Shown here in pieces: positions 6,302-64,000 of a stretch of 64,000 nucleotides of DNA (positions are counted from its first letter, which is position 1; each line of letters begins with the position of its first letter). Position numbers and translations under genes: made by a program. The notes below the pieces were generated by a model. It had not been told where the DNA came from, did no database searches, and saw only the letters and a list, made by a program, of their open reading frames with translations. Location: assembly GCA_002269645.1 (NCBI GenBank), contig NIVC01001037.1, positions 248,001 to 312,000 of the forward strand, written 5' to 3'. The stretch is from Macrostomum lignano (taxonomy: Eukaryota).

Positions 6302-6335
<34 letters not shown>

Positions 6336-11230: not shown

Positions 11231-11284
11231 GTGAGTGGTGGAGTCTGAGCAGTTTTATAGCAAGGATTCTCAATCTTGATTTGG

Positions 11285-12401: not shown

Positions 12402-12463
<62 letters not shown>

Positions 12464-12571
12464 GGACAGACACACAGACAGACGGACAGACAGACAGACA
12501 GACGGACAGACACTAAGACACTAAGGCACTAAGACACTAACTAAGACACTAAGACAGACATACAGACAGGC

Positions 12572-12623
<52 letters not shown>

Positions 12624-12780
12624 GGACAGACACACAGACAGACGGACAGACAGACAGACAGACGGACAGACACTAAGACACTAAGGCACTAAGACACTAA
12701 CTAAGACACTAAGACAGACATACAGACAGGCAGACAGACAGACAGACAGACACACAGATAGACGGACAGACGAACAGACA
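12398..12780. repeat. (GACA)n microsatellite containing a duplicated ~165 bp higher-order unit
   Basis: The block GACGGACAGACAC...CACTAAGACACTAAGGCACTAAG...CATACAG occurs twice. Confidence 0.9.
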
Positions 12781-14348: not shown

Positions 14349-14863
14349 GTCAGAAAAGGTTGTCCAACTCACAGGGAATCATCGTCAGACGCATGAATCT
14401 AAGAAATGGCAATCACAATATTTTTCATCACCCTCCAGGGTTTCTACTATTAGTAGTAAAACAGACAACGAACGATATATCAATATTTCGCTGAACTTAG
14501 CTATTAGTTCTCTCGGAGGTTTGAGTACAAAAAATCATGGCCTCTCGACAGACGCGCCATGGCAACCGTGGTGCAATGATAAGCGTATCGACTCGCCAAG
14601 TTGCCAGTGCAACAACGAGGCTTCAGGCTTCTCAGAATCACTTCTTCTCCCATTGAAATCCGCCTCGCACCTGTAAAAAAGCACCCGAGAAGCTGCGTCA
14701 AGAGCGCCATCGTTCGGCTGAACTCCGGCTCGCATTGGAGAGCAAAAAAACCCTCGGCTGAGACCCGCAAGACGGTCTCTCTATCTGGCATTGGCTGGTC
14801 CCGGTTGCTCTGTATAAAACTGCGTTTAACGGCTACGAAAAAGCTCAAGAGCTCAGAGCAGCC

Positions 14864-15846
14864 ATGCTAAGTCACTGGTTTGTCATTCAGCTACTACGCT
14901 GCAGTCTCATCTGCTTGGCCAGCAGCGAGCGGCCACTGGAGTCGGTGGCGGAGGCGGCGGGGAACCACAGCGGGGTGGTGGACAGAATTGTGGAGCACAT
15001 ATTCCGCGGCTACAACAAGCACCAGCGGCCGTCGCCTCACTGCGACAGGGATGGCTCCACCACCAAAGCCGGCAACGAAATTTTGCTTGTCGAGCCTCCG
15101 ACTGAGGTGTTCGTCAACATGAAGATACTCAGCATCAACAAGGTGGACGTCATCAACATGGAGTTCACGCTGGACATGTACCTGCGCCAGTACTGGAAGG
15201 ACCACCGCCTCATGTGGAACCACAACCAGTTCCGCTTCTACAACGAGTCCATCGCCATTCCCGCCAAGAAGGAGAACCTCTGGCTGCCGGACCTGTTCTT
15301 CCGCAACGGCAAGGAGGGCTACCTGCACAAGATGACGCAGCCGAACTACCTGATCAGGGTGGACCCGGACGGCAGCATTCTGTACTCGCAGAAGGTGACC
15401 ATGAAGTTCTCTTGCCAGATGCAGCTGCAGACGTTTCCTATGGACACGCAGACGTGCTACATCAACATCGGCAGCTACGCGTACACTACTAAGAACCTGG
15501 TGTTCCACTGGAAGCGGGAGCAGAGCACCACCCAGCCAGTGGAGCTGGACACATCCATGCAGATCTCCGAGTTCAACACCCCGGCTGGCGTGGCTGTCAG
15601 CGACTGCACTCGAGACAGCGCGACAACCACAGGCAGCTACGCGTGCCTGAAGGCCGTCTTCAAGCTGGAGCGGCAGCTGGGGAGCTACCTGTCCGGCACC
15701 TACATCCCCGCCATCCTGATTGTTGCCGTCAGCTGGCTCAATTTCTGGATCAACGTTGAGGCCGTGCCCGCCAGAGTGACTCTGGGGCTGCTCACCCTGC
15801 TGGGCATCCTCACCCAGGCGTCCACCGTGATGGGCAGCCTGCCAAG
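14864..15846 (+). CDS. Cys-loop ligand-gated anion channel (GluCl/GlyR-like), variable exon B: signal peptide, extracellular domain, M1, M2
   Basis: gccATG at 14864, signal peptide MLSHWFVIQLLRCSLICLASS, the same Cys-loop motifs, M2 PARVTLGLLTLL. Donor AG|GTTTAG (phase 2) inside LPR. Joined to 18459..18942 it gives a 488-aa ORF. Confidence 0.92.
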
Positions 15847-15914
15847 GTTTAGCACTGGGTTTCTTGGCGTGCTGATATCGTTTCGTTCCTTGGGTCTGAG
15901 GGATGTTTAATAGG

Positions 15915-17439: not shown

Positions 17440-18415
17440 TGAATGGATAAATGGATGAATTAATGAATGGATGAAGGGATGAAGAGATACGTGAATGAAG
17501 GGATGAAGGGATGAAGGGATGAAGGGATGAAAGGAATGAAGGGATTAATGTACGAATGAATGAATGAATGGATGATAAGATAATAGGGGAAGGGATGAAT
17601 GGATGAATGAATGAAGGGATGAATGGATGAAGGGATGAATGGATGAAGGGATGAATGGATGAAGGGATGAAGGGATGAATGGATGAAGGGATGAATGGAT
17701 GAAGGGATGAAGGGATGAATGGATGAAGGGATGAAGGGATGAATGGATGAATGAATGAAGGGATGAATAGATGAAGGGATGAATGGATGAAGGGATGAAG
17801 GGATGAATGGATGAAGGGATGAATGGATGAAGGGATGAAGGGATGAATGGATGAAGGGATGAATGGATGAAGGGATGAATGGATGAAGGGATGAATGGAT
17901 GAAGGGATGAATGGATGAAGGGATGAATGGATGAAGGGATGAAGGGATGAATGGATGAAGGGATGAATGGATGAAGGGATGAATGGATGAAGGGATGAAG
18001 GGATGAATGGATAAAAGGATGAATGGATGAAGGGATGAATGGATGAATGGATGAAGGGATGAATGGATGAAAGGATGAATGGATGAATGGATGAAGGGAT
18101 GAAGGGATGAATGGATGAAGGGATGAAGGGATGAATGGATGAATGGATGAACGGACGAAGGGATGAATGGATGAAGTGATGAAGGGATGAAGGGTGAAGG
18201 GATGAAGGGATGAAGGGATGAATGGATGAAGGGATGAAGGGATGAATGGATGAAGGGATGAAGGGATGAAGGGATGAATGGATGAAGGGATGAAGGGATG
18301 AAGGGATGAAGGGATGAATGGATGAATGGATGAAGGGATGAAGGGATGAAGGGATGAAGGGATGAATGGATGAAGGGATGAAGGGATGAAGGGATGAAGG
18401 GATGAAGGGATGAAG
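17440..18415. repeat. Purine-rich compound satellite (GGATGAA[G/T])n
   Basis: About 1 kb of GATGAAGG/GATGAATG units ending ~40 nt before the acceptor at 18457-58. Confidence 0.95.
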
Positions 18416-18458
18416 TGAGAAAGCAGACCTTCACGCACCGCCAACCGCAACTCCGCAG

Positions 18459-18942
18459 GGTGGCGTACATCAAGGCCATAGACATCTGGATCATCGCCAG
18501 CATCATGTTCGTCATCGGCGCTCTGATCGAATTTGCTGTGGCCTCATTCCGCGCCAGGCGCACCAAGATGGAGAGCTGGCAGCGCGAGATTCGCGGCGTT
18601 GTCCGCTCGGAGCTGCAGCGGCTGGCCGTCATCCGCGGCGGCGGCCTCCCGCCCGGCCTGCCCTGCCACGGCGGCGGCGGCGGCAACCTGCACGGCTATC
18701 CCGGCTTCCCGGAGGAGCTCGAGGACCTCCTGACTGCCAGCGTTGAGGACGGCGGCGGCGGTGGTGGAGCCGGCGGTCCTCACGGCAACAACAAAGGAGC
18801 GCCACCGGCTCCGGTGCCATCGCCAGACTCCGACATCGACACCTACAGCCGGTTCGTGTTCCCCGCCTGCTTCCTGCTGTACAACTGCTTCTACTGGCTG
18901 TACTACCTGGTGCTGGTGAGCACCATCAACCCTGATGAGTGA
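18459..18942 (+). CDS. Cys-loop anion channel terminal exon: M2-M3 linker end, M3, intracellular loop, M4
   Basis: Acceptor caactccgcAG|G completes the Arg of LPR and continues VAYIKAIDIWIIASIMFVIGALIEFA (M3) ... DIDTYSRFVFPACFLLYNCFYWLYY (M4). Stop TGA at 18940-42. Confidence 0.93.
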
Positions 18943-20573: not shown

Positions 20574-21748
<1,175 letters not shown>

Positions 21749-22355
21749 AGACCTTGACTTTAATTTTGGCCTTAAAGTTCGCATCGTATTCTGAGTGCGC
21801 TTAAGACACAATGCGCAATGCGAATGCCCAGACAGCAGAAGCGGAGGACACGACCCTGGCCCTGCCTCAGCCGAAACTGGAAAGCGAAACCAGAAGCTTC
21901 TTACGTTCAAACTCTCTGGATCATCATTTTCAGGGAAAAGTCAGTCGACTTAGTCAATGCTTAGTTAAACTTAGTTAATTGGGCTCTCATATGTGTAATA
22001 AAAATCTAGGGTAAAGGATAAAGGCCACTTGAGGACACACCCAAACGTTAAATAAAAACTTAGTAAGAGAGCCACACAGAAAGGGTTTGAGTTGAAACTG
22101 TCTTCTGCGAAAGACAGACACAGGTCAGTAGATTGAGTGGGGGGCAGGAGGCGGGTTTTTGGCCCTCTCAGTAGGGCAGGTAGGGCGCAAGGTGAGCTTA
22201 GGTGGTCAATAAAATGCAGTGCATTGATGAAAAAAGCCTGGAAACTGTAATACGATGGTGTACAGGGGCAGAACTACAGAGCGACTGACGAGTTCAAAAT
22301 ATTGGCACGCGCAGGCACTGCAAGAGCAGGCATTGTGAAGCTCATCTGGTTTGCG

Positions 22356-28935: not shown

Positions 28936-30460
28936 TTTCGAGTCTTGCTATACTAAGAGCTTCTGGTTGCAACACCGCTTTGGACTGCAGCTGTGTAGTT
29001 TTGTTTTTCTACAAGGTCACAGTACTGCAGATTATAAATAATTATAATATAAAATATAAGATTATAAAGCACCAAGAAACATCTAAGACTTGTAGGCAAG
29101 TGTTGTCTAAATTGGACTAAGCCCAGCGCGTGCGCCTCAGCAGATAAGCTTTGAGAGATTTGCACAAGGCTTACTACAAGTGTACGCTGTCGCATAGCCC
29201 CGGACAGACAAGCACAGCTCTCAACCCTCTGTCTCTCACTGTTTTCTGTCCAAAGCATTCAGTTTGAAGTGCATAGTTGCCTGTACATATCTTGCAGTAT
29301 CTGGTTGTGCATAGGCTCGCAGTATCTGTCTAACCAAGCACTACAGCCCCCTCTCGGAGAGAGAGAGTTAAGCCTGACTATTATTGAGTGCGTCGTGTAA
29401 GGTCTGAGAAAGTTCTGAGGTTTTGAGAATTTCAGTTTATTTAGTCTGTAAAACAGGCACGTAGCTCGTACAAGCTAGACAGTGTAACTTCTTTCATACC
29501 TTGCAATCCTACTTTAATTAGAGTTTATGCTATTGACGCGCACTAATCGATTCTGTTACTCAGAACTATTGATGTGATTTCTCAAAAAAGTCAGAAGCTA
29601 CCGGTACAATTTCGACAGTGACCGCCGATGCTGACCAACTGTTCTAAAGCTCAGTTCAGCTTCAAAGAGTTACTGCTAAGAAAGATTTTCCCTGTTTCGA
29701 CAGAGAAAATGCGTAAGAGACGCCTGCAACGTCCTTTTCCCAGTGTTTTAGAAGTCCATGAAGCCAAACCTTGCTGTATCTGCCAGGGCTGGCGCATAGC
29801 TAATCGAGTGCCCTGCGGCGGCGCCAAAATAAGTCTTAACTACACGTACCGGTTGCCAAAATGATGTAGGGATTTTATCATGTAGAAAGGGATTATATAG
29901 TAGCTTCCTATATAGAAATTAATCTATTGGTTGTCTTTGTACTTTTCCCTTTGGTATCTTCGACATCAACCATAGACAACACTGTACGCTGAGTAGGAAG
30001 CCCTGAACATAATACGAGAAATATACTCGCCCCAGAGCGCTACTAAAAGCTACCCAAAAGCTCTAACAGCTCTAAACTTGTAGCAACTTGGCCCAGCGGC
30101 TTTGCCTACTCAAAAATCGAGTTCAAAGACAGTTCGTGTAGGCCAAGAACTCAAAGAGCAGATGGACGGGAAGTTACTCTTGAACTCTGAGCCACCACTA
30201 TACGCTCAAGACCATTTTGTTAACATCACAATAAAAAAGGCCCATTTTTCTGCGATCACGTGGCTTTGTACTATTAAAAAATCACATTGGTACATCCCGT
30301 CGTGCTTTTTGTCGGCTCAATTCATGACGGAGTGAATGAACCTTAATTCGATTTGGGTTAATATATATCGTAAAAAGCAAGGCAGCCAACAAGAAACAAA
30401 TAAGCAAGACAGTTATGACTACGTAAAAGGATGTTCTCACTAAATTAATAAATTTAAGAG

Positions 30461-30769
30461 GGTTGTAGCTTAGTGGTCAGAGCGTCGGACTCACTATTTG
30501 AAGGTCGGGGGCTCGATTTCCGAACCAACGAGGACAATTTGTGTCCTTGAGCAAGACACTTAACTCTTGGTTGCTTCAGTTCACCCAGCTGTAAAATGGG
30601 TGCCAGCATTAGCTGGGGTAATTGAGGGTGTGTGTGGCGACCCCCCCCCCCTTGGACTGAACAGCCGTACGCAGCCTTCAGATGCGCCGCGCAATAGCTG
30701 CGGATGAGCTGTCGGTCGCACATCTGGCCCAATTTAAGCAGGTTCAATCAATTTTAACAATTATTATTA
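30461..30769 (+). mobile_element. tRNA-derived SINE with CORE-like central domain, copy 1
   Basis: Head GGTTGTAGCTTAGTGGTCAGAGCG (A box) and GGGGCTCGATTTCC (B-box-like). Centre TGTGTCCTTGAGCAAGACACTTAACTC...CTGTAAAATGGG resembles the MIR/CORE consensus (from memory). (TTA)n tail. A second copy lies at 40537..40842. Confidence 0.85.
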
Positions 30770-36422: not shown

Positions 36423-38388
36423 GGGCTGAGTTTGAAATCTATGCGGAGCTCAATTTTGCTCTGTCAATGGATTTTGCACTTTAATTTTTGTATTTGTGAG
36501 ATGGAAATGTTTTTATGCAGATTCGCTGCTTAATGATTCAGTTTTATTAAATGGTATTGCTTTGTTTCCGATCGCAAACTGAAGTGAATTTTGCGTCCAA
36601 ATTTCGTAAAATTTGCGGTTGGAAGTTTTTAAGTTTTGCCTCAGATATTCGTTATCAAACTTGAGTCAGTTTGAGCGTCATCAAGGTGCTCCTTTCAAAT
36701 TATTTTATCTGTCGAGAAAGTTTTGCTTGTTGGTTGCAGCGTAATTTTGAATGCATTTTTACTTGTTAATAAATTTATGATACTTATGCAAATCATCTGC
36801 ATTCGATGTCATATTTAGTTATTTTTTGTAGCTTAACTTCTGAGCTGTAAGTTTCTAACTGAAGTTGAATTGCGTAGTGCATGTCTACTATAAGTACGGT
36901 GGATGGCACCTAATGAATCCTTATTTTTTGTCTTTTTGTTGTGATAAAATCAAAATAGAAGAGCTTGACAGCGTGAGAACTAAGACTACACGAGATCTAT
37001 AATTATGGTGCATTAGTACCCTGTTATTAACTCATTTTCTCTTTGACTGCGATTGCAAAAATTCGCCCTATCTACCTTATGATATAAGGCATATTCGAGT
37101 GCTGTGAATCACTGCTCTGATGGGTCTGTTGGCCTCATTGGCCTGACTTTGTGTCTCTGGGTCACAGGGTGCGTCTTAAGACCTGAGATCTTCGGGAGTC
37201 ATGAGATGGAGGAAGTCCTCCTCGTCGTGGATGAAAATGGCCGGCCAGCTGGAGTCGCCGGTGGCGCGACAGTTCACTCTCGGACAGGTGCAAAACTGCC
37301 GCCTTGAATTTCTCTTGAGTCATTTGTGTACGGATTGGCCATGCAGTTGGAGGCTCGCTACGAGTCCAAGGTACACTGCATCGAATCACTGTGTCACACC
37401 CTCAAACCGAGCCGCCACAACTTCTGCCCAGCTATTTGGGCTACTGTTAAATACACGGTGAGTGAACCTCCATTTTGTTAAGTTTAGCACCGCCAAGTCA
37501 CCCTGATAACATGCAAGTGAGGTACTGGTTAGAATCTCGTCCGGCTGATAAAGACCTGCCTGCATGCTAGCCGTAAGTCAGCTCGTTCACTCATTGAGTA
37601 AGTTGAATTTTTGCTTTAGAAAAAATTTAATAGCCGTTTTGAACTTTAAAGGGAGCTGCCGCCGCTTCACGGCATCACGCCATCGTGAGAGAGCCCAACC
37701 ATTGGCGGAGCTCTTAGTCGCGCTATTCGACTTTTAAAGAACGCAGCTGTGTTAGCGGTTAAGTTCTTGATGTTTCTATTGTCATTTCAAATTGCAGCTC
37801 CGGTCCCAGGCAATTTACTCGGGGTGAGCAACTGCCCACATTGCATTGTTGAAATTCTCTCCAGTTATCTCGTGCATTTGATCAGCTTTGAAGGCTGCAT
37901 TCTCTCCCTCTATCCTCCCTGTGTCTCCTCGCGGGCAACCTTGTAATTAAGCATGTTCAAGTCCGATGAAAAGAAGAATTACCGTTGAATGCCGGGGCTA
38001 AGGGACACGTTGGCGGCGAGTGGGCGATGGAGGCTGGTTGTTGAATCCTGCGGCCATCTTCACAGCTATTTTATTGCTGCTCTGCTTCATATTGAATAGA
38101 CTCCATTGTGCGAGAGTGGCTGCAAGAGAGCTGGGGCGCGGGGTGGCCGCGCGGTGCTCAGGGGTAGAAAAAGAGACGCAGAATCTGAGCATCATCAAAT
38201 TTTGATTTGAACAAGCCCAGACTTGCTGCTCCGAAGCAGTCGCGGCGGCTCCCCCTTCTAAGCCCTCCCTGAGGCCACTCCGACAGAGCGGAGCTCTTTA
38301 GCGCCTAACTGCTCGCTTGACACGCTTGGCAGGCAGACAGAAAAGCAGAAGCACCCTAAAACGCAGTTCTTGCCAAATTTCAGTAAGG

Positions 38389-38396
38389 TGACGTCA
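38389..38396. promoter_or_regulatory. Perfect CRE palindrome TGACGTCA 18 nt upstream of the STK33-like ATG
   Basis: Sequence match only; function is untested. Confidence 0.3.
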
Positions 38397-38413
38397 TTCT
38401 CCCGTCACCTGCC

Positions 38414-40089
38414 ATGGCCAAATGGACGAGCACTGACGACACGGCGAGTGTGGTGCCATTTGTGAAGATCGACTCCTGCCAGCAGCTTGAGGAGACCTTC
38501 CAGTTCGGCGAAAAGCTCGGAGAGGGCGCCTTCGGCAGCGTGCTGCTGGCGCTGAGAATCTCCGACGGGCACAAATTCGCCGTAAAGAAGGTAAATCAGC
38601 TGTCAGAATGAAGCCAAGCTGGAATTCTCCTTTCTCAATGCAGTTTGGCCTGGGCAAAGTGCACGTCAGAGAGGGGCCAAAGAGATGGGGACTGTCTGCG
38701 GGCCCCAAATCCTCCCCCACTTAGTTCGATGTGCTATCTACCAGCCCAGGTTGAGATAGGGGCAGGGGCGCCCACCAAAGCACCAAGCATTGGTACTCCT
38801 TAGGGTTGCGTAATTTGTAGTCCTACTATTTTTAATGGATTATTTATTTGATTCGCCATAACTTACTTCCCTCCGCCGCCTCAGATGGTGAAGAAGAAGG
38901 ACCCGAAGACGCAGTACGGCAAGTCCTGGGAGAACGAAATCCACGTTCTGAGCCGGCACCGGCACCCCAACATCGTCGCCGTGGACGCCATCTACGAGTC
39001 AGAGAACAGCTGCTACCTGTTCATGGAGCTGTGCGACGGCGGCAACCTGGCCGACGAGTTGCAGCGTCGGACTCGATTCGCTGAGCAGGACGCCAGGTGC
39101 ACCTTGAGGCAGCTGGGCAGCGCGCTGAGCTACCTGCACCGCCACCGGGTTGTGCACCGCGACCTGAAGCTGCACAACTGCCTGCTGAAACGAATCCCGT
39201 CGGCTAAAACTACCGACGGCAGCAGTCCGCGTTTCTGCCGACGTCGAGGCGAAGCCGCTGTGGACCGCAAGGGGTCACCGGCTACGCACCCGTGCCCGTT
39301 TGTGGTGAAGCTCACCGACTTCGGCTTGTCGATTGAACTGCGCGTCTCCGACCAGTCGCTGGGCGACAACGTCGGCACCCCGGCTTATCAGGTGCGGATA
39401 GTCATGGCCTTCATGGCGATGCGGGGAAACATTGGGCAAGCAGGTAATGAAGTTCGCTAGTCACGATAGGGACGGACCATTGTACTCCGTCAATTACCAT
39501 GCTGTGATATGATGAGATGAATGAGATATGATGGCCCCTTGCACCATAGCAAGTCCTCCGTAGCTACGCCTCTGTGTGTATGAGCAGGTTTCAAATTCGA
39601 AGCCCATTTGGTTTCATTGTGACTTAACTACTTTCAGCCATCTCATGAGGAGGTATCAGGTATGGTAGAAATTCCTGCCGCAGTGACTTCAATCATCCAT
39701 TCAACCAACCCGCCAAATCCATGCAGGCGCCAGAAATCGTGAAGTGCAGCAGCTACACAGAGAAATGCGACGTCTGGTCGTTGGGCATCATCATGTTCAG
39801 CCTGGTGCACGGCAGCCTGCCCTACTCCAGCCGGTCGGAGTCCGACCTCATCGACGAAATCAAAGATTTCAATTACGGCCGACTCTGCAGCCGCTGCAAG
39901 ACCTGCTCGGAGCTCAGCGCCGAGTGTCGAGCCGCTCTGAGCCACCTGCTTGTTCAATCAGCCGTGGACCGCTGGTCAACGTCCGAGTTCATGGACTCCG
40001 CCTGGGTGACGGAGAAGTCCGGCGGAGCGCGGGAGGGCAACATCCTTGCCATGATGCGCGACGTCAACAGGACTACTAAAGACAAGTAG
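38414..40089 (+). CDS. STK33: STK33-like Ser/Thr kinase (CAMK group); exons 38414..38590, 38885..39391, 39727..40089 (348 aa)
   Basis: LGEGAFGSV, FAVKK, LFMELCDGG, HRDLKLHN, KLTDFGL, GTPAYQ|APE, CDVWSLG. The C-terminal GNILAMMR resembles the STK33 tail (NVLEMM). Both junctions are GT-AG, phase 0. Confidence 0.85.
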
Positions 40090-40536
40090 CCCGCTTACTC
40101 ACTGCCCACTCAATATTTGATGACAATGACCTGATTCAAAGTCAGTTATTGCTGTACATTCAGTATATTGTGCAACACACGAATTCCAGAAAGCTCTGCT
40201 GTATGCAGAACTTGAACCGCGCGAACTTGCTGCTTTTTAAAAAACCGTATTTTTTGCATCATGATTAGCTAATAAAGATTGATACAAGATGTATTCTGCG
40301 ACTAGGCGATTTCATGCAAAGCAAAGCAGGGAACTAACTGGCGATATTAGAATTTGCCTTTAGAATTATTGAATTTCAAGGTTTTCATGGTTTCATTATT
40401 TCAGATCAGAAATATAGCAATATGCTTTGAGTAGTTAGTCAGAGAGACAGCAAAAAGTCAGCTGTCTCAATGCTTGATTGTGGCCTGATTGTGGCTGTAA
40501 AATGAGCTCTCATGCCTGTATAAACTCATCAGATAG

Positions 40537-40842
40537 TAATAATAATAATTGATTACACCTGTCCCAATTGGGCCAGGTGTACAACCGACAGCTCAGCCGC
40601 AGCTATTGAGCGGCGCATCTGAAGGCTGCGTACGGCTGTTCAGTCCAAGGACTGGGGGGTCGCCACACACACCCTCAGTTACAACAGCTAAGACAGCATT
40701 TACATTTTACAGCCGGTCGAACTGAAGCAATGCAGAGTTAAGAAGTGTCTTGCTCAAGGACACAGATTGTTCCAGTGGGATCGGGAATCGAACCCCCGAC
40801 CTTCAAGTCCTGAGTCCGACTCTCTAACCACTAGGCTACAAC
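40537..40842 (-). mobile_element. tRNA-derived SINE with CORE-like central domain, copy 2
   Basis: Reverse complement of the 30461 copy: GTTGTAGCCTAGTGGTTAGAGAG (A box), GGGGTTCGATTCCC (B box), TGTGTCCTTGAGCAAGACAC, a shared 3' body CCTTGGACTGAACAGCCGTACGCAGCCTTCAGATGCGCC, and a (TTA)n tail. Confidence 0.88.
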
Positions 40843-41764
40843 TAGCAGATAGGGGGTACAGCAGATGAGCGGAGTAACTTGCATGCAGAAGCTTGCTTGC
40901 TTGCATGGCGTCATGGATCTTGACGCCAGAGGAGCGCGAGGGCAGCTCAGCTCAGTGGTAACGCGCCTGACTCGTTCGCCTGAACACCCAGGAATTTGAG
41001 CTTGTGCACAGGAGTTTAACTTTTCTTGTAAACGTACTCAGGGGTCGGCGGAATGGACATGACTGCTGGGCTGCTGCTTGACTGCCAGCTCAATTGCTGC
41101 AGCAACCGAAGGCTCCCATTGAAAACTGGCTAAAACGGAAAAAAAAGAGCTAAGTAAGTGGTAAGAGCAAAAATCCGATTAAGAATTCACAGCCTTTAGG
41201 AAGCCTTCCATCAACTAACAGCATTGAGTTTTGGTGCCTCCACGAAGTTCATTCAAAGAAGCTCCTGGTTGCCAGTCTTGGCATTGTCTGCCAAAGGCAT
41301 TCAGCGGAAGCTGCAACTGCCAATAGCATTGAGTGTTTAAAAAAACTTCCTCATTTTAATAAGCCAGTTGTTGGGCTCACGCACAGCAGAGTCTTGCTTG
41401 TAAGGGCCAGTGTAAATTTGCACAAAAGAAATTGTGCGGATTGCTATGCAACAATGAAACTGTTAACTTCATTGACGACATCGAGACTTTCTGTGTTCAT
41501 GTTTACTGAAGAGGTCCCGGCAGCTTCTTGCAAGCTTCAACTAGAAGTGCAGGTACCAGTTTAGGGACAATGGTGGCATTCTACACAACCCTTCAGGCGC
41601 GCGCTTGAACGTGCACTGAACGCAGGACAATGTATATGGGACACTGGATTGGGGGGCTTCGTCACAAAATCCCCATTGTCAGAATGTTCATATAGCAGAG
41701 GCCCAGAACCCCGGGCTTATCATTGTGGATAACTGCTGAGCTACCGCGGACGCTGTGCCTGTCG

Positions 41765-41989
41765 ATGTCACCAGCAAAAAACCAGCAAATAGAAGCCAGG
41801 TACAGCAGAGAGCACCACACCGATGCCCAATACCTGGAACAGCTGAATCGGCAGCTTCAGGCGAGTCCTCGGCTGACGCAGCAGGGCGAGAAACTGCAGC
41901 AGCTCTGCTCGGAGTGCCTCGCCTACCTGTCGGCCAGGAAGAAACTGCAGCATGTCAGAGACACCGGCAGGCCTTCTGAAGATGTGTAG
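41765..41989 (+). CDS. 74-aa ORF homologous to the central helical segment of ODAD4/TTC25 (microprotein or terminal exon of a partial paralog)
   Basis: Gapless 39-aa alignment to the ODAD4 exon-5 product in this window, 19 identities by hand: DAQYLEQLNRQLQASPRLTQQGEKLQQLCSECLAYLSAR vs [39 protein letters not shown]. Confidence 0.65.
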   Translation: MSPAKNQQIEARYSREHHTDAQYLEQLNRQLQASPRLTQQGEKLQQLCSECLAYLSARKKLQHVRDTGRPSEDV

Positions 41990-43299
41990 CCAATCTGCTC
42001 AGAGAAAGTATCTCGAATATACTTTCTGAAAGGCCATTAAACTTTCAATTCCTAAATGTAATTTGCTAAGGAAATATTATATGATTTTTCCAACTGAGGT
42101 GTTTTTTTACTCTGTTTCCGCTTCATTTGATCTGCTCAATATGTACATGCATGCGTAAAAAATAATTACTTTTTTCATGTAGTAGTTTAATTTAAAAAAT
42201 GGTACAGTTCTCATCACGTGAGTTAAATTATAACAAGTCTACGAGTACAAAAATTTTTTTAAAGGATGGATTTATTTATTCGACAATAAATTAAATAAAG
42301 CGCGCTGTGTTAGAAGTAAATTTTATTAGTCTGTATCGTATGTAAAACTATAAATTAAATGAAAACTCTTATAAAAACCAGTGTGATCATTCATTTTTAC
42401 TTTTGCATAGATGCAGCTGCAGTGAATGCAGTGTATATGTGTGTGTGCATGGCATGCACTGTCGACTCTATAGCAATAAATAGTATTTTTCAGCTAAATG
42501 CGTTAAAAGCTCTGATCTCGAGGCCAAAGCTGCTTAAAGTTGCATCGCTATACTTTATAAGTTTGATTTTGTTCGGAACTGTTCCTAAGTTTTTTTGTAT
42601 TTTTAAAGAGATAATTTTGCTAAAAGTGCCTTATGTTTTGATCGAGTCTTAGCCGATCGAGTCCTTAGGAATGTTCCTAAAGTACGTGAGGGAGTTAAGA
42701 GGCTCATGAAGAGATGAAACTATGTTCATCTATTTTTTCGAATATGTACATATATGCATAGTCATGGATATGCATGTATAAAGACGTGTATATGGATGTA
42801 TATCACAAGGACCACTGTAGTATACATGCAGTTACACGAGCTAGTGATCGCGAAAATATCTCAGATCCAGTTATAGTAAAACCGCATGTTGATACCTACA
42901 AAATTTATCAGGAAATATTCCTTCAGTCTGAGTCCAGGTCTAAACTCCTAGATTGAAATTAACAAATTAACGTTAGGCATATCTGGGTGTATATATTATT
43001 TATGATCAATCTCGTGAATGTCCCGCAACAATTTTTCATGATGGTTATAACAAATTAGCCTTACTGCAAACCAAAAATTGCATTAAATTAGGTTTTACTT
43101 ATTTTTGTTGTCCTAGTAAAACACTTTGTTTAGAAACCTGAATTCAGATTAAAACTTACTTTTCGTATCCATGACACTTACACATTTCTATTGTCGTTTC
43201 GGTGCAATTCAATTTTCATTTCCATCGCAATTTTTGTCCGTTCAGTATATATACTGTACCTATAGATAGCCACTTTTATTGTAAGGCTTGACAACAAAA

Positions 43300-46200
43300 A
43301 TGCCGCGACAAGACGATGCAGGCTCTGAGTCAGAGCACGGTAAGATTCCAAAGAGTACATTTGAAATCTACCGCGCTGAAGGTGATTCTCAGTTCCGAAA
43401 CAAAAGCTTTCTTAAAGCAATCGAATGTTACACACAGGTAAGAACTAAGCCTGCAGCTGGCGTAAACTGTTGTTTTATTACTTTTTATAGATTGAAACGG
43501 CTCTAAAATTTCTACTACATAAAGTTTTCGGCAGTTTCACAGAGGCAATTATATTATCTAACTATATATTTTTTACACAGAACATGTCACCCAGGTATAG
43601 AAATTCAGGCAGTATGACAACATTTTAACTGATTTTCTGTAGTATTGAACAGTTTTAGATATTAGTTATTGAAGATTTTTTAAATATTTTGATAGTATCT
43701 CTTTTATATTTAGAGGCAGTGGAAGCCTGCAAAAGCAAGAAGAAATGAATCCATTTTATCAATCAGTTACAAATTTAAATTTTGCAAAAGTAAACATAAG
43801 TTTTGTTTAGTATTTATTTGATACTCATATAGTTATTACATAACACAGAATAACTTTCAGATTGAAGAAGATTTCGGCTATTTATATCAGTAAATATTTT
43901 CAAGTATAATTCTAAAATGATGAATGCTTATGAGTTTAATAAGTAGTCGAAAGGAAATATATTAGTTAAATAAGGCATTTTCCTGATTGTCTGTTTCTAC
44001 TAAAAATAGTATTTTATTTATTTTACTAATTCTATTTGTATCTATGCGATCATGTTTGGTTTTTTAAAATATATTTTGACATTTTAATACCAATATTTAT
44101 TTTAGGCACTAGAAATAAAGCCAGGCGATCAGTACTGCCTGGTGAATCGTTCGAAGTGCTACCTCAATGAGGGCAACATCGCCAAGGCCCTGGCCGATGC
44201 TGAGGAGAGCCTAAAGGAGGACGCCGCCTTTCACAAGGTGAACTTTGAATATCATATATCATAAATCATTTTTGATATTTCATATTTGAAAAAATACCTA
44301 TTTTATCAAGAAACTTTAAGGCACTTTGAAACCATCCGCCACAATGTCCATCTTATTATTCTCCGCCAGGGAATATTTCAAAAGGCCGAAGTTCTGTACT
44401 TCAAGGGTGACTTTGAGAACGCGCTGGTGTTCTACCACCGCGGCCACAAGCTGCGCCCGGAGATGGAGGAGTTTCGGCTGGGCATCCAGAAGGCCGAGGA
44501 GGCCATCAATAACAGTGTCGGAGGTGGGTGTGGCGGCAATTGCAATATCCTGACTGCTCTACTCATAGTAAAGATAAAATCATTTTTAGTTATCGAATCG
44601 CTTCCCTGCCCTGCATTCCAGACCCGTCCGTCATCAAATTGAGATCCGACGGTGACCTGTCGTTTTTCTACGCAGCTGAGGAGGTAAATGTGTATTCTTT
44701 AAACTATTGTAATATACTACTATCATTTGGCTTGCATTTTCAGTAGTATATATTTTTCGTAAACTAACAATTGAAGCCCCGAACTTTCATCAACACGGAT
44801 CAACCATCCACACTTTTGAATGAAGTTTATTCCTAATTATTTGCGCGTTAGAATATTTTTTGTTAATATACTACTGCTACTAATGCGGAGTGAGTAGTAG
44901 CGACGCTTTGTTCTTTCTCTAAGCTTCTCCCCCGGGGGAACAACACGTTTCTGCTTGAAGTTTTCAGAGGCAAAACAGGATGGAGGCGCGGGTCAGATGG
45001 GCCGAAGAAGTCACGCGGCACCCGTGAGCGATCAGGTCAGCTGGTTGTCCGGGTCTCAGCGCGCACAGCTTAAGACTCTGAGACCGGGAGCCGCCTAGCA
45101 ACTAAAATGTTGATAGAAAATTAGCCTCTTAATGCTGCGCTGAAGCTTAATATTTTGCCAAGAATTTGGCGCGGGCAAAGCTGAAGCAGCAGGACGCTGC
45201 AACTCAAAAATCCTGCCAAACTTTGCTGGAGGTCGGTGCTGGTTGCAAAATGGCTCGGCAAAGTTGGGAAGTCTTCAGTGGATTTTTCTAGACAGCTTTT
45301 GTCTATGGCGCAACCAAGGACTACTCAAGTAGAGGGACGCGAAACCTTCTTTCTAGGAAATTTTCCAGAAATATGCAGCGCCCTGCTGCTTCAGCTGTCT
45401 GTGTCATTTTGCTCACCTACAGTTCGCTTTTGGGTGCAGGACAAAATGCAATGCTTATATTACTATCAGTAGTATCAACTCCCATACTTATTTTAAATTA
45501 ATTTTAATCTAATTAGTTCTTGGCCTACATCACTGTTTATATTCCGTGGTATTTTTACTCTAGACAGTAACAAAGGCATTCGACTCTCAAGGTGTTGTTG
45601 CTATGAAACGTCTATATTACTAATTGCTACTAACAGTCATAGTGTGCATGCCTACCCAGTGTGCAGGTTATTTTCATATTCAATGCATTTTTGGTGAATT
45701 TGCACTGTTGCAGACTGATGGCTCGTCTAATGAGGTAATTTGCTCATTGCACTCGGCCCACTCCAGCAAGGACGCTTGCATATCTGCCAATTTTAATTTG
45801 CAAGCTTTGCAAAGCCTACAAAAGTAAATTATACCCGGCATATACTACTCAGTTAATTACCCCGTTAATTTTTATTCTTCAAAGCGGAGAAACTTAAGGA
45901 AGAGGGAGCAAAGTAGTCAGAGGCTACTTTATACACCTGTAGTCTCACCTATCAGCTCAATTAGACTCTCCTAAGTCAGTCTGCCTTCATCTCTAGGCAC
46001 CTTCATCAAGATTAGTGCACGATGGGGTGTTCGGGTTTTCTTAACTTAACCCCAGGCCCGAAACCCGCCCCGAAACCCGACCCAAAACTCGACCCGAAAT
46101 CCGACCCCCGAAACCTGACCTAAAACCTGACCCGAAAAATGACTCGAAACCTGATCAGAAACCGGACCCGAAACCTGACCCGAAAAATGACCAGAAACCC

Positions 46201-49200
46201 GACCCGAAACCTGACCCGAAAAATGACCCGAAACCTGACCTGAAACCCGACCTGAATCCTGACCCAAAACCCAACCAGAAATCCAACCCAAAACCTGACC
46301 CGAAACCCAACCCGAAACCTGACCCTAAGCCCAAACCAAAACCCAACCCGAAACCTGACCCGAAACCCGACCCGAATCCTGACCCAAAACCCAACCCAAA
46401 ACCTGACCCAAAACCTGACCCGAAATCCAACCCGAAACCTGACCCAAAACCCAACCCGAAACCTGACCCAAAACCCAACCCGAAACCTGATCCAAAACCA
46501 ACCCGAAATCCGACCCGAAACCTGACCCGAAACCCGACCCGAAACCTGACCCGAAACCCGACCCGAAACCTGACCCGAAATCCAACCCGAAACCTGATCG
46601 AAACCCGACCCGAAACCTGACCCAAAACCCAACCCGAAACCTGACCCAAAACCCAACCCGAAACCTGACCCAAAACCCAACCCGAAACCTGACCCAAAAC
46701 CCAACTCAAAACCTGACCCAAAACCCAACCCGAAACCCGAACACCGCTAGTTACCACCGATTTCATATCTTCGACAAGACCATTCAAGATTTTGCTTAAT
46801 TCGAAGTTTTGCATCTTTGCTGAAGATTTGGATTTTTTGGCTTATTTGAGTATGAGTAAAATATCAATATAAATTTTATTGATCCCATTTTGCAGCTAAC
46901 GGTAAGGCCACTTGGATGATTTAGAAGTGAAAGAAGCTGCCTATGTTACACCCTCGTGTGCTCGTTGACAACCGTTTACGTGCTTTTTGGCTGTTTAATT
47001 TCACGTGTAATTTCTAAAAAACTTGCTGAAAGCGTTGAAAATATTTGAATAGCCGGCTTGAGTTGCCGCTCTTGACGGATTATTGATTTATAAGTGACGT
47101 GCGATTCCAAATGATTGATTCATCTCCTGCTTGATATCCCATGACGATTGCCTACCGTGTCTCAACCCGCTTTTGACAATATTTATGCTTTAATTTAACA
47201 AACTCTAAAGTTTTAATGTATCTATTGATACATAATCGTAATATACACTCGTATTTGTTCAAGGCATCAAGGCAGGCCTGCAATGTTCAGAATGTCATGT
47301 TGTGCACCATTGTGATTGGCTCTGTGTTTTGGTAACCTGGGAGTTTGGACAGTTTTCACACCCAAGGGACAGGGAGTGTACATGCATTGTACACCCTGCG
47401 TGAGCGTGTACGGGTGCGTGCCTGCGTACAGCCCTGGTGCGCTTGTGTGTGCTCTGCAGAATTGGCAGAATCGCTTCAATGCTGTCTGCCGTACGATGTC
47501 GCCGGAGTCAACAGATTTTACCTGTACTTTAAAGTGCATGTTAACCTGCATGGGACAATCGAAATTTGTTTAAATTGGAATCTCTTCAATCCGAAGCAAA
47601 CAATTTCTGCTTGCAGAAGAAGAAGCCGGCCGCCCGGTCCAGCTACCAGAAGCCCAAGAAGGAGGACAGCGGGCCGAAGCGAGCTCAGCGCAACAAGGCG
47701 CCAGCGGACTCCAAGACCATCAAGAAGATGCTCGGAGACCTGTATGCCGATCGCGAGTACCTCGAGAAGCTGCTGCGCGAGGAGTCGGCTAAGGCTCGAA
47801 AAACTGAGCACAGCGAGAAGATCCAGGACCTGTGCATCGAGGGCCTGAACTACCTGGACAGCCGCTCGGAGTTCTGGCAGCAGCAGAAGCCGCTGTACAG
47901 CCGCAAAAAGTCGGCGATGCGAGAGGCCGCCGAGAAGGACAAAAGCAGCGCCGCCAAGTACGTCATTGCCACATTGGAGGAGATCGACAACAAGCAGGTA
48001 GGCACGCGATCTTGTTGCTTGAAAGTTCCATTTCAGCAGGTGTTTGTAACTTCGCACATATATTTTCATCGAGCGTATTTGTAAACAAAACAGTTTGTAG
48101 CCAAAATTTTAGAAACTTTACTCGTTCAGTCTGCAGTCTTTGTAGATGTAGCTGCAGTTTTATAGCAGGAGTCTTTGTAGCTGTAGTCTTTGTAGCTGTA
48201 GTAGTCTTTGTAGCTGTTGTAGTCTTTGTAGCTGTAGTCTTTGTAGCTGTAGTCTTTGTAGCTGTAGTAGTCTTTGTAGCTGTAGTAGTCTTTGTAGCTG
48301 TAGTCTTTGTAGCTGTAGTAGTCTTTGTAGCTGTAGTAGTCTTTATAGCTGTAGTCTTTGTAGCTGTAGTATTTGTAGCTGTAGTAGTCTTTGTAGCTGC
48401 AGTCTGTAGCTACAGTCTTTGTAGCTGTAGTAGTCTTTTTATTATCACCCTTTCCGCTTCACTTTGTAGTTTCACTCTGACTCTAATCCTAACCCCCCGC
48501 AGACCGCAGGCGAGCACGAGGCGGCCATCAAGCAGGCCACCCGCCTGCTGCGCACGGTGGAAAAGTGGAGCCCGGAGGACCTGCAGAATCGCGAAGAGAT
48601 CCGCGCCAACCTGCACTCGCTGATTGGAAACTCGCAGTTCGAGCTGGAGCGATACGACCAGGCCCTGGCCAGCCACCAGGCCGACCAGAAGATCGGCGAG
48701 GAGCACGAACTCGAGGAGTCGCAGGCCCGCTCCAGGGACAACATCGGACGGGTGCTGGCCAAGCAGGGCAACTTCAGCGAGGCCATCCAGGTGTGGGAGC
48801 AGCGGCTCGAGAGCTCCAAGAGCCTCAGCCCAATGGAGTCCACCTGGCTGCACCACGAGATCAGCCGCTGCTACCTGGAGCTCAAGGAATTCAACAAGGC
48901 CAAGGAGCTGGCGGAGAAGGCGCTGAGCTACGCCAACCAGATGGGCGACAACCAGTGGCTGCTGAACACCAACGTCCTGGTGCGTTGTGGGGGGATGTAC
49001 TTTTATATTTAGACCTAATTCCAGTGTTGCAGCATACTATTACTACTACTACTACATCTATTTTCAGGTGGCCCAGTGCGAGGTCCGTCTGAAGAACTAT
49101 GCCAGCGCGGCGGGCAACTTCGACAGCGCGCTAGAGCACGCGCGCATCGTTGACAACGCTCTGGCCATTGACGCCATAAACCGGGCCATCCAGGACGTCA

Positions 49201-49782
49201 ACCAAAAGTTGGTGGAGGAGGAGAAGCGCCTGGAGGAAGAGAGGCAGGCCGGCGAGCAGGGCGAGGGTGACGGTAAGAGTCAAATTATTGAAGGGAACCC
49301 GTTGAATGACTTGGCATCTCAGCATTCCACTGAAGCCAATTGGCATCTCAACATTCCACTGAAGCCAATTGGCATCTCAGCATTCCACTGAAGCCAATTG
49401 GCATCTCAACATTCCACTGAAGCCAATTGGCATCTCGGCATTGCACTGAAACCAATTGGCATCTCGGCATTCCACTGAAGCCAATTGGCATCTCAGCATT
49501 CCACTGAAGCCAATTGGCATCTCAACATTCCACTGAAGCCAATCGGCATCTCAGCATTCCACTGAAGCCAATCGGCATCTTGGCATTCCAAAAACAGTTT
49601 TGAATTCGCATATTCGCACACATTCGAGAGAGTCTAAGAAACTGTTTTTATTTGCAGCCAAGCCGGACGAGGCCGCTGGAGGTGAAGAGCAGCAGCAGCA
49701 GCAACAGCAACAGCAAGAGCAACAAGAGCCAGTGCAGCAGCAGCAGCAACAAGAGCCAGTGCAGCAGCAGCAACAGGAGTGA
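43300..49782 (+). CDS. ODAD4: Outer dynein arm docking complex subunit 4 (ODAD4/TTC25), TPR protein; exons 43300..43437, 44106..44237, 44370..44523, 44622..44683, 47617..47997, 48503..48979, 49068..49272, 49658..49782 (557 aa)
   Basis: [78 protein letters not shown] and [13 protein letters not shown] all match the TTC25 family. All seven junctions are GT-AG and phase-consistent (1674 nt). Gln-rich tail. Confidence 0.93.
46050..46742. repeat. Intronic minisatellite, ~6/12 bp unit (ACCCGAAACCTG variants)
   Basis: About 55 imperfect copies in ODAD4 intron 4. Confidence 0.93.
48165..48435. repeat. Intronic minisatellite (TGTAG[TAG]TCTTTGTAGC), 15-18 bp unit
   Basis: Tandem copies in ODAD4 intron 5. 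Confidence 0.92.
49310..49585. repeat. Intronic minisatellite, 29 bp unit (CATTCCACTGAAGCCAATTGGCATCTCAG)
   Basis: About 9 copies in ODAD4 intron 7. Confidence 0.93.
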
Positions 49783-51716: not shown

Positions 51717-59120
<7,404 letters not shown>

Positions 59121-63336: not shown

Positions 63337-63867
63337 GATGGATGTTCTTTACATGTTAATGTAATATAATGTCAGCATTTAATTTTATCTACTTTTTAGC
63401 TCAAAATAATCCTAAACTATAGAAGTCGTTGCGCTAAATGAAGTCGTTGTCTTACGCGCGTTCATTTACATATGATGTCAATTTTTTCCAAATTAAATTG
63501 TGTCGCTATTTAGGAGTAAATTTGGCTGTCTATGGCTTTGCATACGCTCAAAGCTTTTAATGAATTAAAAAGAATAAATGGAGGACAATCGCAAATTTTA
63601 TTCGACTTATATTTTACAATAATCCTTGCAATATGTCCGGGAAAGTGATCGATTAAATCCTGCAAAATAAAATCTATGTCAATAACCTCCCTGAAAGTGA
63701 GCTTTAAAGTGGTTTATGGAGATCATGAAACGCCGCTATCGTTGCATCAAATCCGGAATGGTTCGCACCCAACGTTCGGCTTAGATTGCCGTGCTTCCTG
63801 CCCAGGGGATTCTTTCTGATTACACACGAGTGAGTATTGTCTTGATGCGAATTAACGCTGGAGCTAC

Positions 63868-64000
<133 letters not shown>

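What the first reader, a model, noticed from the sequence alone, without database searches (positions are those of the whole stretch)
41154..41989. Candidate ODAD4-derived microprotein 1.3 kb upstream of ODAD4
Seen: ORF 41765..41989 aligns without gaps to the ODAD4 segment between the two TPR clusters (19/39 identical), with many conservative changes, no stops or indels in the aligned segment, and GC-rich codon usage. It is on the same strand as ODAD4. A stop-free frame at 41154..~41552 ends at CAG|GTACCA and could be an upstream exon, but its resemblance to TPR sequence is weak. Known: single-domain microproteins can act as dominant-negative or adaptor partners of their parent complexes. Inferred: an old partial duplicate kept by selection that may modulate outer dynein arm docking, for example in sperm versus epidermal cilia.
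Basis: partly seen in the sequence, partly recalled or inferred. Interest (0 to 1): 0.7.

Follow-up and report, generated by a model that had tools for sequence, protein, structure and literature searches.

The report
ODAD4-derived small ORF upstream of ODAD4
A 74-codon open reading frame 1.3 kb upstream of the flatworm cilia gene ODAD4 is a real, old copy of one helical-hairpin piece of that gene; its frame is intact in both assembled copies of the locus, but nothing yet shows that it is expressed or still functional.

Summary
The window is Macrostomum lignano (Mlig_3_7, NIVC01001037.1, about 248001-312000). ORF 41765..41989 (+, 74 aa) matches ODAD4 exon 5: 19/39 identical as reported, 19/44 gapless by BLASTP, E 1e-9. 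Its score exceeds all 5000 shuffles. A profile built from 44 non-Macrostomum ODAD4 proteins finds it at E 3e-6.

It is the only ODAD4-like piece outside the gene. It shares Macrostomum-specific residues with the local ODAD4, so it is an old partial duplicate that arose in this lineage. It covers one predicted helix-loop-helix unit of ODAD4 and lacks the flanking invariant motifs LGxLY and FWxQQKP.

The ORF is intact in the second assembled copy (9 substitutions, 0 indels, 4 synonymous to 5 nonsynonymous). Nucleotide identity to the parent is only 56%, and simulated neutral decay rarely keeps this much protein similarity, so it probably stayed coding for much of its history. Present-day constraint is unproven: pN/pS is 0.36 (not significant), divergence equals the upstream flank, there is no gene call, and no database protein resembles it apart from one weak match to a bacterial TPR-repeat protein.

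The proposed upstream exon 41154-41552 is rejected, because frameshifts and stops break it in the second copy. A role in dynein-arm docking is untested. Verdict: real feature, interpretation partly supported, moderate interest.

The parts
41765..41989 (+). Stand-alone 74-codon ORF (ATG to TAG), the candidate microprotein. It corresponds to NIVC01001037.1:289765-289989.
   Evidence: Translation. The ORF is intact in the second assembled copy at L001:8469-8693, with 9 substitutions and 0 indels. AlphaFold2 on the single sequence predicts two helices, 3-33 and 35-67, with pLDDT 83.5. Its codon-usage score is the best of its six frames.
41816..41947 (+). Core of the ORF that is homologous to ODAD4 (ORF aa 18-61, ODAD4 aa 205-248).
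   Evidence: BLASTP gives 19/44 identities, gapless, E 1e-9. tblastn of P0001 gives E 1.3e-5 and finds no other piece outside the gene. The family HMM matches positions 28-70 at 24 bits. Nucleotide identity is 56%, and by codon position 0.45, 0.75 and 0.48.
47743..47874 (+). The parental segment, inside ODAD4 exon 5 (exon 47617-47997, aa 163-289). It is a helix-loop-helix lying between the two TPR blocks.
   Evidence: Exon model. AlphaFold2 of ODAD4 with an alignment predicts helices 196-220 and 226-252 (pLDDT about 76-85), flanked by low-confidence linkers at 165-195 and 252-269.
43300..49782 (+). The ODAD4 (TTC25) gene: 8 exons, 557 aa. It is BOX15_Mlig006729g1 (P0122).
   Evidence: Splice junctions and translation. 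Identity of the locus to the annotated gene. PDB relatives 7rro, 8j07 and 9cpc at E about 1e-129.
41154..41552 (+). Tested and rejected as coding sequence; it is not part of the feature.
   Evidence: The two copies differ here by five indel events of 13, 1, 2, 3 and 1 nt. The counterpart L001:7859-8243 has stops in all three frames. No Pfam hit and no ODAD4 similarity. A 1-nt indel 9 nt upstream of the ATG also breaks any in-frame extension of the ORF.

Best explanation
Shown: the ORF descends from a partial duplication of ODAD4 exon 5 that happened in the Macrostomum lineage. It predates the split of the two assembled locus copies. Only one structural unit was copied, the helix-loop-helix between the two TPR blocks of ODAD4. 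It now stands alone with its own ATG and stop, 1.3 kb upstream of the parent gene.

Inferred: nucleotide identity to the parent has fallen to about 56%, yet the frame, the hydrophobic/polar pattern and 43% amino-acid identity survive. The copy was therefore most likely kept as coding sequence for most of its history. It is most likely a small, unannotated protein-coding gene under much weaker constraint than ODAD4.

Speculative mechanism: the product would be a 74-residue helical hairpin that mimics the ODAD4 central hairpin. It could occupy the surface that hairpin normally contacts, either within ODAD4 or on a docking-complex or IFT partner, without supplying the TPR solenoid. That is a microprotein-type competitor or adaptor. 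Expression, translation and any effect on cilia are untested.
For: Homology: with the E-values and shuffle results given in the observation check.

Origin in this lineage: the ORF scores best against M. lignano ODAD4. Six residues (R29, A33, R36, E42, Q45, C48) are shared with it and rare in 44 orthologues. At G41 the ORF keeps the family-majority residue where the local ODAD4 has Ser.

A discrete module: the predicted loop of the ORF (S34/P35) aligns with the ODAD4 loop at 221-225, and the ODAD4 hairpin sits between low-confidence linkers.

Historical coding constraint:
- Simulated neutral decay reaches SW>=96 in fewer than 1 of 3000 runs at d=0.66 with 0.05-0.2 indels per substitution. It does so in 1.3% of runs with no indels, and in 0.1% at d=0.45 with 0.2 indels per substitution. 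The locally measured ratio is 0.17-0.31 indel events per substitution.
- Codon position 2 is 75% identical, against 45% and 48% for positions 1 and 3.

The two assembled copies: ATG, stop and frame are conserved, with 0 indels in 225 nt against 12.6 events/kb in pooled non-coding DNA (P=0.06). pN/pS is 0.36. ORF nonsynonymous divergence is below that of the introns plus downstream flank (p=0.024).

The codon-usage score is highest in the ORF frame: -0.05 against -0.32 to -0.98 for the other five frames.

The missing gene call is uninformative. The GenBank annotation excluded non-coding and repeat-overlapping transcripts and relied on TransDecoder for coding potential (PMC5730564).
Against: There is no evidence of transcription or translation. 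No gene is called between the kinase and ODAD4 in either copy. No protein among 5.8 billion clusters shares words with the ORF. The only phmmer hit among 1.84 billion representatives is a bacterial TPR_12 repeat protein.

Constraint between the two copies is not significant: nonsynonymous versus synonymous p=0.12, ORF substitution density 0.040 against 0.037 in the upstream flank, and nonsynonymous versus that flank p=0.83. ORF pN (0.029) is significantly higher than ODAD4 pN (0.0053; p=0.008).

The copy lacks the invariant LGxLY and FWxQQKP motifs, and the invariant residues Y205 and F248 are replaced.

Three of the six frames are open here, which points to a CAG/CTG-rich composition effect. 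The codon-usage score is below that of true exons, which score +0.1 to +0.6. The base at -3 of the ATG is T, whereas ODAD4 has A. No polypyrimidine acceptor or obvious promoter was seen.

The finding was selected because it looked protein-like, which inflates every 'too conserved to be neutral' argument.
Confidence: 0.45

Rival explanations
1. Non-functional relic. The ORF is a decaying fragment (pseudo-exon) of an old partial ODAD4 duplication. Its frame is open today because the sequence is CAG/CTG-rich and poor in stop codons. It may have been coding once but is now evolving neutrally and is not expressed as a protein.
For: No annotation and no homologues. Substitution density between the two copies equals the neighbouring non-coding DNA, and pN/pS is not significantly below 1. 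Eight of 13 family-invariant residues are lost. Two other frames are open over the same DNA. The ATG context is weak and there are no splice or promoter signals. M. lignano is rich in duplications (PMC5730564), and tandem gene duplicates occur in this very window. A marginal shifted-frame match, KKPANRSQVQQ against [11 protein letters not shown] at the start of exon 5 (p about 0.01 before correcting for 6 tests), could be the trace of an ancient frameshift.
Against: Purely neutral decay to 56% nucleotide identity should have destroyed the frame and the protein similarity. There is no frameshift or stop in either copy and no indel in 225 nt, although flanks carry 11-14 indel events/kb. The codon-position pattern and the best-frame codon usage look protein-like. 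The shifted-frame match has only 45% nucleotide identity (hand count from the sequence) and was not chosen by the DNA alignment.
Confidence: 0.4
2. The ORF is not a stand-alone gene. It is part of a longer unannotated transcript: a terminal exon of another gene, an upstream exon or uORF of an ODAD4 transcript, or a non-coding RNA. Any function would then lie at the RNA or regulatory level.
For: It lies 1.3 kb upstream of ODAD4 on the same strand. The GC-richer block 40090-41990 diverges less between the two copies (0.037) than the AT-rich spacer 41990-43299 (0.089). A 100-nt stretch, 41496-41595, is identical in both copies. M. lignano has complex transcriptional units that are cut by trans-splicing (PMC5730564).
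Against: The in-frame extension upstream of the ATG is broken by a 1-nt indel in the second copy, and the candidate upstream exon is frameshifted. No polypyrimidine-AG acceptor like those of the ODAD4 exons precedes the ORF. The one internal GT donor (41799|41800) would splice out of frame into ODAD4 exon 2 (read from the sequence). No Rfam family matches in 38000-44000.
Confidence: 0.1
3. The resemblance is not descent from ODAD4. It would be generic TPR-like or coiled-coil similarity arising by chance or convergence, or descent from another TPR gene.
For: The only database hit of the ORF is a bacterial TPR_12 repeat protein: six repeats at about 22-26 bits each, with EASYGAEHPxVAxxLxNLAxLLQATNRL aligned to EARYSREHHTDAQYLEQLNRQLQASPRL. 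Both sequences are helical and rich in Q, E, K and L.
Against: The match to the neighbouring ODAD4 is much stronger (39.7 against 25.8 bits) and survives composition-preserving shuffles. An independent family profile finds it. No Pfam TPR model matches at E<=0.01; the best is TPR_TTI1_C at E 0.054, below its cut-off. Lineage-specific residues are shared with M. lignano ODAD4. It sits next to the parent gene.
Confidence: 0.03

Closest known systems
[quoted passage not shown]
   Same: Significant sequence homology to the central helix-loop-helix of ODAD4 (aa 205-248). It retains D207, Y210, L211, E212, L214, Y241, L242 and R245, and shares Macrostomum-specific residues. The predicted hairpin is the same, with the loop at the same place.
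   Different: It has no TPR blocks. It lacks the invariant LGxLY and FWxQQKP motifs and has replaced invariant Y205 and F248. It is 74 aa against 557 aa, and its nonsynonymous divergence between the two copies is about five times higher. It is a fragment derived from ODAD4, not an ODAD4 orthologue or full paralogue.
microProteins (miPs): small single-domain proteins derived from larger regulators that titrate them or their partners, for example plant LITTLE ZIPPER proteins or animal Id proteins (from my own knowledge)
   Same: It is small, has a single predicted helical interaction-type module, is evolutionarily derived from a multi-domain parent, and is encoded separately.
   Different: Expression, binding and dominant-negative action are all untested. 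The known examples derive from transcription-factor dimerisation domains, not from an axonemal docking protein. It is unknown whether the ODAD4 central hairpin is an interaction surface at all.
Duplicated gene-fragment pseudogenes (partial, unprocessed duplicates near the parent gene)
   Same: A single-exon fragment of a neighbouring gene, unannotated, without the rest of the parent, in a duplication-rich genome.
   Different: There is no frameshift or stop in the homologous region in either copy. Frame and amino-acid pattern are retained at near-saturated nucleotide divergence.

Membership tests
ODAD4/TTC25 protein family | Significant match to a family profile | tested here: met
   A central-segment HMM built from 44 non-Macrostomum orthologues hits the ORF frame at E 3.1e-6 (23 bits). 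The full-length HMM gives E 3.7e-5.
ODAD4/TTC25 protein family | N-terminal and C-terminal TPR blocks, which form the alpha-solenoid | tested here: not met
   tblastn of ODAD4 and the full-length HMM find no TPR-like piece outside 43300-49782. The ORF and the 41154-41552 frame have no significant Pfam TPR hit.
ODAD4/TTC25 protein family | Invariant motifs of the central segment: T196, L201, G202, Y205, D207, L211, L214 ... L242, R245, F248, W249, Q251, P254 (P0001 numbering) | tested here: not met
   Only D207, L211, L214, L242 and R245 are kept, which is 5 of 13. Y205 is replaced by H and F248 by L. The LGxLY and FWxQQKP motifs are absent.
microProtein (miP) class | Small, single-domain, and sequence-related to a larger multi-domain protein | tested here: met
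   74 aa, two predicted helices, homologous to ODAD4 aa 205-248.
microProtein (miP) class | Retains a protein-protein interaction surface of the parent | tested here: inconclusive
   The copied unit is a discrete helical hairpin between flexible linkers. Its partner in ODAD4 is not known from the tools or papers read, and 8 of 13 invariant residues are lost.
microProtein (miP) class | Is transcribed and translated | not testable with these tools
   No RNA-seq, Ribo-seq or proteomics data were accessible. Exact and word-based protein look-ups found nothing, and annotation rules make the missing gene call uninformative.
microProtein (miP) class | Interferes with, or adapts, the parent's complex | not testable with these tools
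   This needs binding and knock-down experiments or multimer modelling.
Gene-fragment pseudogene | Disabling lesions (stops or frameshifts) within the homologous region | tested here: not met
   The alignment is gapless and stop-free over 44 codons. The ORF is intact in both copies.
Gene-fragment pseudogene | Neutral evolution: dN/dS about 1, and indels at the same rate as in the flanks | tested here: inconclusive
   pN/pS is 0.36 on only 9 differences (p=0.12). There are 0 indels where about 2.8 are expected (P=0.06). Divergence equals the upstream flank but is lower than the introns and downstream flank. As a yardstick, the last exon of the real kinase gene gives 0.72.
TPR_12-type tetratricopeptide repeat | Match to Pfam TPR models above threshold | tested here: not met
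   No TPR family reaches E<=0.01. The best is TPR_TTI1_C at E 0.054 and 13.6 bits, against a cut-off of 27. The only other link is a weak repeat-wise resemblance to one bacterial TPR_12 protein.

The most novel reading that the evidence does not exclude
Macrostomum has evolved a lineage-specific microprotein from the central hairpin of the docking-complex subunit ODAD4. It would be expressed in some ciliated or sperm cell types and would tune assembly, transport or docking of outer dynein arms by competing for the hairpin's binding site. This would be the first microprotein-type regulator described for the axonemal docking machinery.
Probability: 0.12. Interest if true: 0.65.

Novelty: new member of a known kind. 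Interest (0 to 1): 0.35.

Why it matters
If the ORF is expressed, it would show a structural cilia gene giving rise to a stand-alone single-module protein by partial duplication. It would also give a handle on what the poorly understood central hairpin of ODAD4/TTC25, a primary ciliary dyskinesia gene, binds, in a flatworm where transgenesis and RNAi are available. If it is a relic, it is an ordinary by-product of a duplication-rich neopolyploid genome. It would then mainly show how CAG/CTG-rich fragments can stay open and look like genes.

Tried and rejected
- Nucleotide similarity between the copy and the parent: blastn found none. A gapped Smith-Waterman DNA alignment was only marginal (p=0.017), although its main blocks agree with the in-frame offset of 5927 nt.
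- Homologues of the ORF: the word-indexed search found nothing. Exact look-ups of the 74-aa and 88-aa versions found nothing. phmmer against 1.84 billion representatives returned only a bacterial TPR_12 protein. No orthologue was therefore available for cross-species dN/dS.
- A third locus copy: ODAD4 copy g3 (L003) starts inside the gene at a contig end, so it has no upstream region.
- Upstream exon 41154-41552: rejected.
- In-frame extension of the ORF upstream of the ATG: rejected because of a 1-nt indel in the second copy.
- Splicing from the internal donor 41799|41800 into ODAD4 exon 2: out of frame, running into an immediate stop (read from the sequence).
- Further ODAD4-like pieces in shifted frames around the ORF: one marginal hit, KKPANRSQVQQ, judged probably chance. 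Nothing downstream.
- Transposon capture: no terminal inverted repeats or target-site duplications around the ORF, and no other copy in the window.
- RNA families in 38000-44000: none credible. tRNAs: none.
- RFX X-box near ODAD4 or the ORF: none.
- The bacterial promoter/terminator scan does not apply to this organism and showed nothing.
- Foldseek of the ORF model against PDB: no match at E<=0.001.

Full report
**Source of the window.** A concatenation of the ODAD4-like exons found its best match in Macrostomum lignano BOX15_Mlig006729g2 (P0001). The next best hits were only about 45% identical. The locus fetched for cluster member P0122 (BOX15_Mlig006729g1; GCA_002269645.1, contig NIVC01001037.1:281300-307782) is base-for-base identical to window 33300-59782. 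The window is therefore NIVC01001037.1, about 248001-312000, of the Mlig_3_7 assembly.

I rebuilt the ODAD4 gene from its splice junctions. It has eight exons, spans 43300-49782 and encodes 557 aa. It matches the solved bovine and human ODAD4/TTC25 chains at E about 1e-129. The annotation on record calls a protein kinase that ends at window 40089, then ODAD4, and nothing between them.

**Check of the observation.** The ORF 41765..41989 exists as described. Its stop lies 1310 nt upstream of the ODAD4 ATG on the same strand.
BLASTP gives 19/44 identities, gapless, 39.7 bits, E 1e-9.
- In a tblastn of the ORF against the whole window, ODAD4 exon 5 is the only real hit (E 1.4e-7; the next has E 0.22).
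- The Smith-Waterman score of 96 exceeds all 5000 composition-preserving shuffles, which give a mean of 36.8, sd 5.3 and maximum 61. A Gumbel fit gives p about 8e-7.
- A profile HMM of the central segment, built only from 44 non-Macrostomum ODAD4 proteins, hits this frame at E 3.1e-6. It is the sole non-ODAD4 hit among 1151 six-frame ORFs.

Two caveats apply. Two other frames across the same DNA are also open, so the lack of stops partly reflects CAG/CTG-rich composition. GC3 (0.69) is only slightly higher than in one of the shifted frames (0.64) and lower than in ODAD4 (0.80).

**What was copied.** The ORF is the only ODAD4-like fragment outside the gene. The homologous core (41816-41947, ORF aa 18-61) corresponds to ODAD4 aa 205-248, inside exon 5.

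AlphaFold2 of ODAD4 with a 45-sequence alignment predicts this region as a helix-loop-helix (helices 196-220 and 226-252, pLDDT about 76-85). It lies between low-confidence linkers at 165-195 and 252-269 that separate it from the two TPR blocks. The ORF alone is predicted as two helices, 3-33 and 35-67, with pLDDT 83.5. Its turn, at S34/P35, aligns with the ODAD4 loop. So one discrete structural unit was copied.

Of the 13 residues invariant in this segment across animals, the ORF keeps 5: D207, L211, L214, L242 and R245. It lacks the flanking LGxLY and FWxQQKP motifs and has changed Y205 to H and F248 to L.

**Age and origin.** The ORF scores higher against M. lignano's own ODAD4 (96) than against any other ODAD4 (76 or less; median 56). 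Six residues are shared with it and are rare in the other 44 orthologues. One of them, C48, is found in none of the 44. At G41 the ORF keeps the family-majority residue where the local ODAD4 has Ser. This points to a duplication within the Macrostomum lineage.

The duplication is old. blastn detects no similarity. Codon-aligned nucleotide identity is 56%, and only 9 of the 19 identical amino acids use the same codon. It also predates the split of the two assembled locus copies. The collinear second copy (L001, NIVC01001484.1, ODAD4 g2) carries the same ORF at 8469-8693.

**Evidence on selection.**

(a) Deep history. Identity by codon position is 0.45, 0.75 and 0.48. Amino-acid identity is 43% with no frameshift.

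I simulated neutral decay of the parental segment. At 0.66 substitutions per site, with 0.05-0.2 indel events per substitution, none of 3000 runs kept SW>=96. Without any indels, 1.3% did. At 0.45 substitutions per site the figures were 0.1% with 0.2 indels per substitution and 20% with none. The ratio measured in the local non-coding DNA between the two copies is 0.17-0.31. These indels are not assembly noise, because the 1674-nt ODAD4 coding sequence has only one, an in-frame indel in a Gln repeat.

Purely neutral decay is therefore a poor explanation. The copy very probably spent much of its history as coding sequence. The caveat is ascertainment: the finding was picked because it looks protein-like.

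(b) Recent history, comparing the two copies. The ORF has 9 substitutions in 225 nt and no indels. Four are synonymous and five nonsynonymous (E10K, H18R, L37M, S56A, E72G), giving pN/pS 0.36.
- Yardsticks: ODAD4 gives 0.09 (pS 0.057), and the last exon of the real kinase gene gives 0.72.
- Nonsynonymous versus synonymous is not significant (p=0.12).
- Nonsynonymous divergence is lower than in the introns plus downstream spacer (p=0.024), but not lower than in the upstream flank (0.037; p=0.83).
- It is significantly higher than ODAD4's nonsynonymous divergence (p=0.008).
- Zero indels has P=0.06 at the pooled non-coding rate of 12.6 events/kb.

Present-day constraint is thus possible but unproven, and in any case much weaker than on ODAD4.

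(c) Codon usage. Scored with a table from ODAD4 plus the kinase exon, the ORF frame is the best of its six frames (-0.05 against -0.32 to -0.98). It ranks 43rd of 420 stop-free segments. True exons score +0.1 to +0.6.

**Gene structure.** The two copies differ there by five indel events, and the L001 counterpart has stops in all three frames. It has no Pfam or ODAD4 similarity.

The open frame upstream of the ATG (from 41696) is also not conserved. A 1-nt indel lies 9 nt before the ATG, and the upstream in-frame stop sits at a different place in L001. No polypyrimidine-AG acceptor comparable to those of the ODAD4 exons precedes the ORF.

The only model consistent with both copies is a mono-exonic ORF starting at ATG 41765. 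Its ATG context (T at -3) is poorer than that of ODAD4 (AAAATG). An ATTAAA lies about 45 nt after the stop in both copies, and AATAAA lies about 300 nt downstream. These are weak signals in AT-rich DNA.

**Expression.** This could not be tested. No protein in the 5.8-billion-cluster collection shares words with the ORF, and exact look-ups failed. phmmer against 1.84 billion representatives returned only a bacterial TPR_12 repeat protein, matching ORF aa 10-39 repeat by repeat at about 22-26 bits each. That resemblance is weaker than the ODAD4 match and is not backed by Pfam TPR models.

The missing gene call carries little weight. The GenBank annotation of Mlig_3_7 was filtered to remove non-coding and repeat-overlapping transcripts, and coding potential came from TransDecoder (PMC5730564).

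[quoted passage not shown] TTC25 is required for ciliary localisation of the other docking subunits and interacts with IFT (PMC10139691). What the central hairpin contacts is not stated in the text I read.

If the ORF is translated, the simplest mechanism is mimicry. A free hairpin would occupy the site that the ODAD4 hairpin normally binds, but without the solenoid. It would act as a competitor or adaptor. This is inference only, and the loss of the flanking invariant motifs argues that whatever it does is not simply the ancestral function.

**Verdict.** The feature is real and the homology claim is correct. I put about 0.45 on a still-functional small coding gene and about 0.40 on a now-neutral relic. 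I put about 0.10 on its being part of a longer or non-coding transcript, and about 0.03 on non-homologous resemblance.

It is a new member of a known kind: a partial-duplicate small ORF that is a candidate microprotein. It is not a new kind of system. Interest is moderate and would rise if transcripts, peptides or conserved orthologues in other Macrostomum species are found.

Noticed in passing
window 40537-40842 (and 30457-30769, inverted): A roughly 300-nt dispersed repeat, 83% identical between its two window copies and also present in L001. On the minus strand it carries a tRNA-like B-box (GGTTCGATTCCC), so it is probably a tRNA-derived SINE. ARAGORN calls no tRNA in the window.
   Followed up: partly
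window ~40930-41150: By eye, a tRNA-like head (GCTCAGTGGTAACGCGCCTGACT) followed about 200 nt later by an A-rich tail (GGAAAAAAAAGAG). It was not verified with any tool.
   Followed up: no
window 41496-41595 (within 41440-41600): A 100-nt stretch identical between the two locus copies, inside about 150 nt with only 2 mismatches. Neighbouring non-coding DNA differs by 4-9% and is full of indels. This could be a conserved non-coding element or chance.
   Followed up: partly
window 42612-42697: An 86-nt segment that matches the second copy in reverse orientation at 96.5% as well as in forward orientation. It is therefore a near-perfect palindrome in the AT-rich spacer upstream of ODAD4.
   Followed up: no
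window 10017-11231, 14762-15907 and 18406-18939 (+): Two tandem copies of a Cys-loop ligand-gated ion channel gene (Neur_chan_LBD at E 1e-46 to 1e-49, plus the start of the membrane region), and a further transmembrane-region exon. Local tandem gene duplication is thus active in this window.
   Followed up: partly
window 1894-2427 (+): An exon-like ORF with an Ariadne (RBR E3 ligase) domain, E 1.8e-13.
   Followed up: no
window 46057-46740, 48135-48438, 49311-49590: Minisatellites inside ODAD4 introns 4, 5 and 7, with periods of 12, 18/51/66 and 29. They produce long spurious ORFs such as GFGSGF... and differ in length between the two locus copies.
   Followed up: partly
window 20574-21752, 53662-53886, 6054-6387, 12402-12780, 63860-64000: Long (GACA)n-type microsatellites, up to 295 units, together with many 19-37-nt minisatellites across the window. 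This fits the high tandem-repeat content reported for M. lignano.
   Followed up: no
window 49658-49782 (ODAD4 exon 8): ODAD4 ends in a Gln-rich tail. Between the two copies it differs by one Gln codon and a P/Q change. This is the only indel in the ODAD4 coding sequence.
   Followed up: yes
window 39721-40086 (last kinase exon): The word-indexed protein search with this exon found no match at E<=1e-20, although a 348-aa kinase ending here is annotated in the same assembly. This is unexplained and may be a gap in the index.
   Followed up: no
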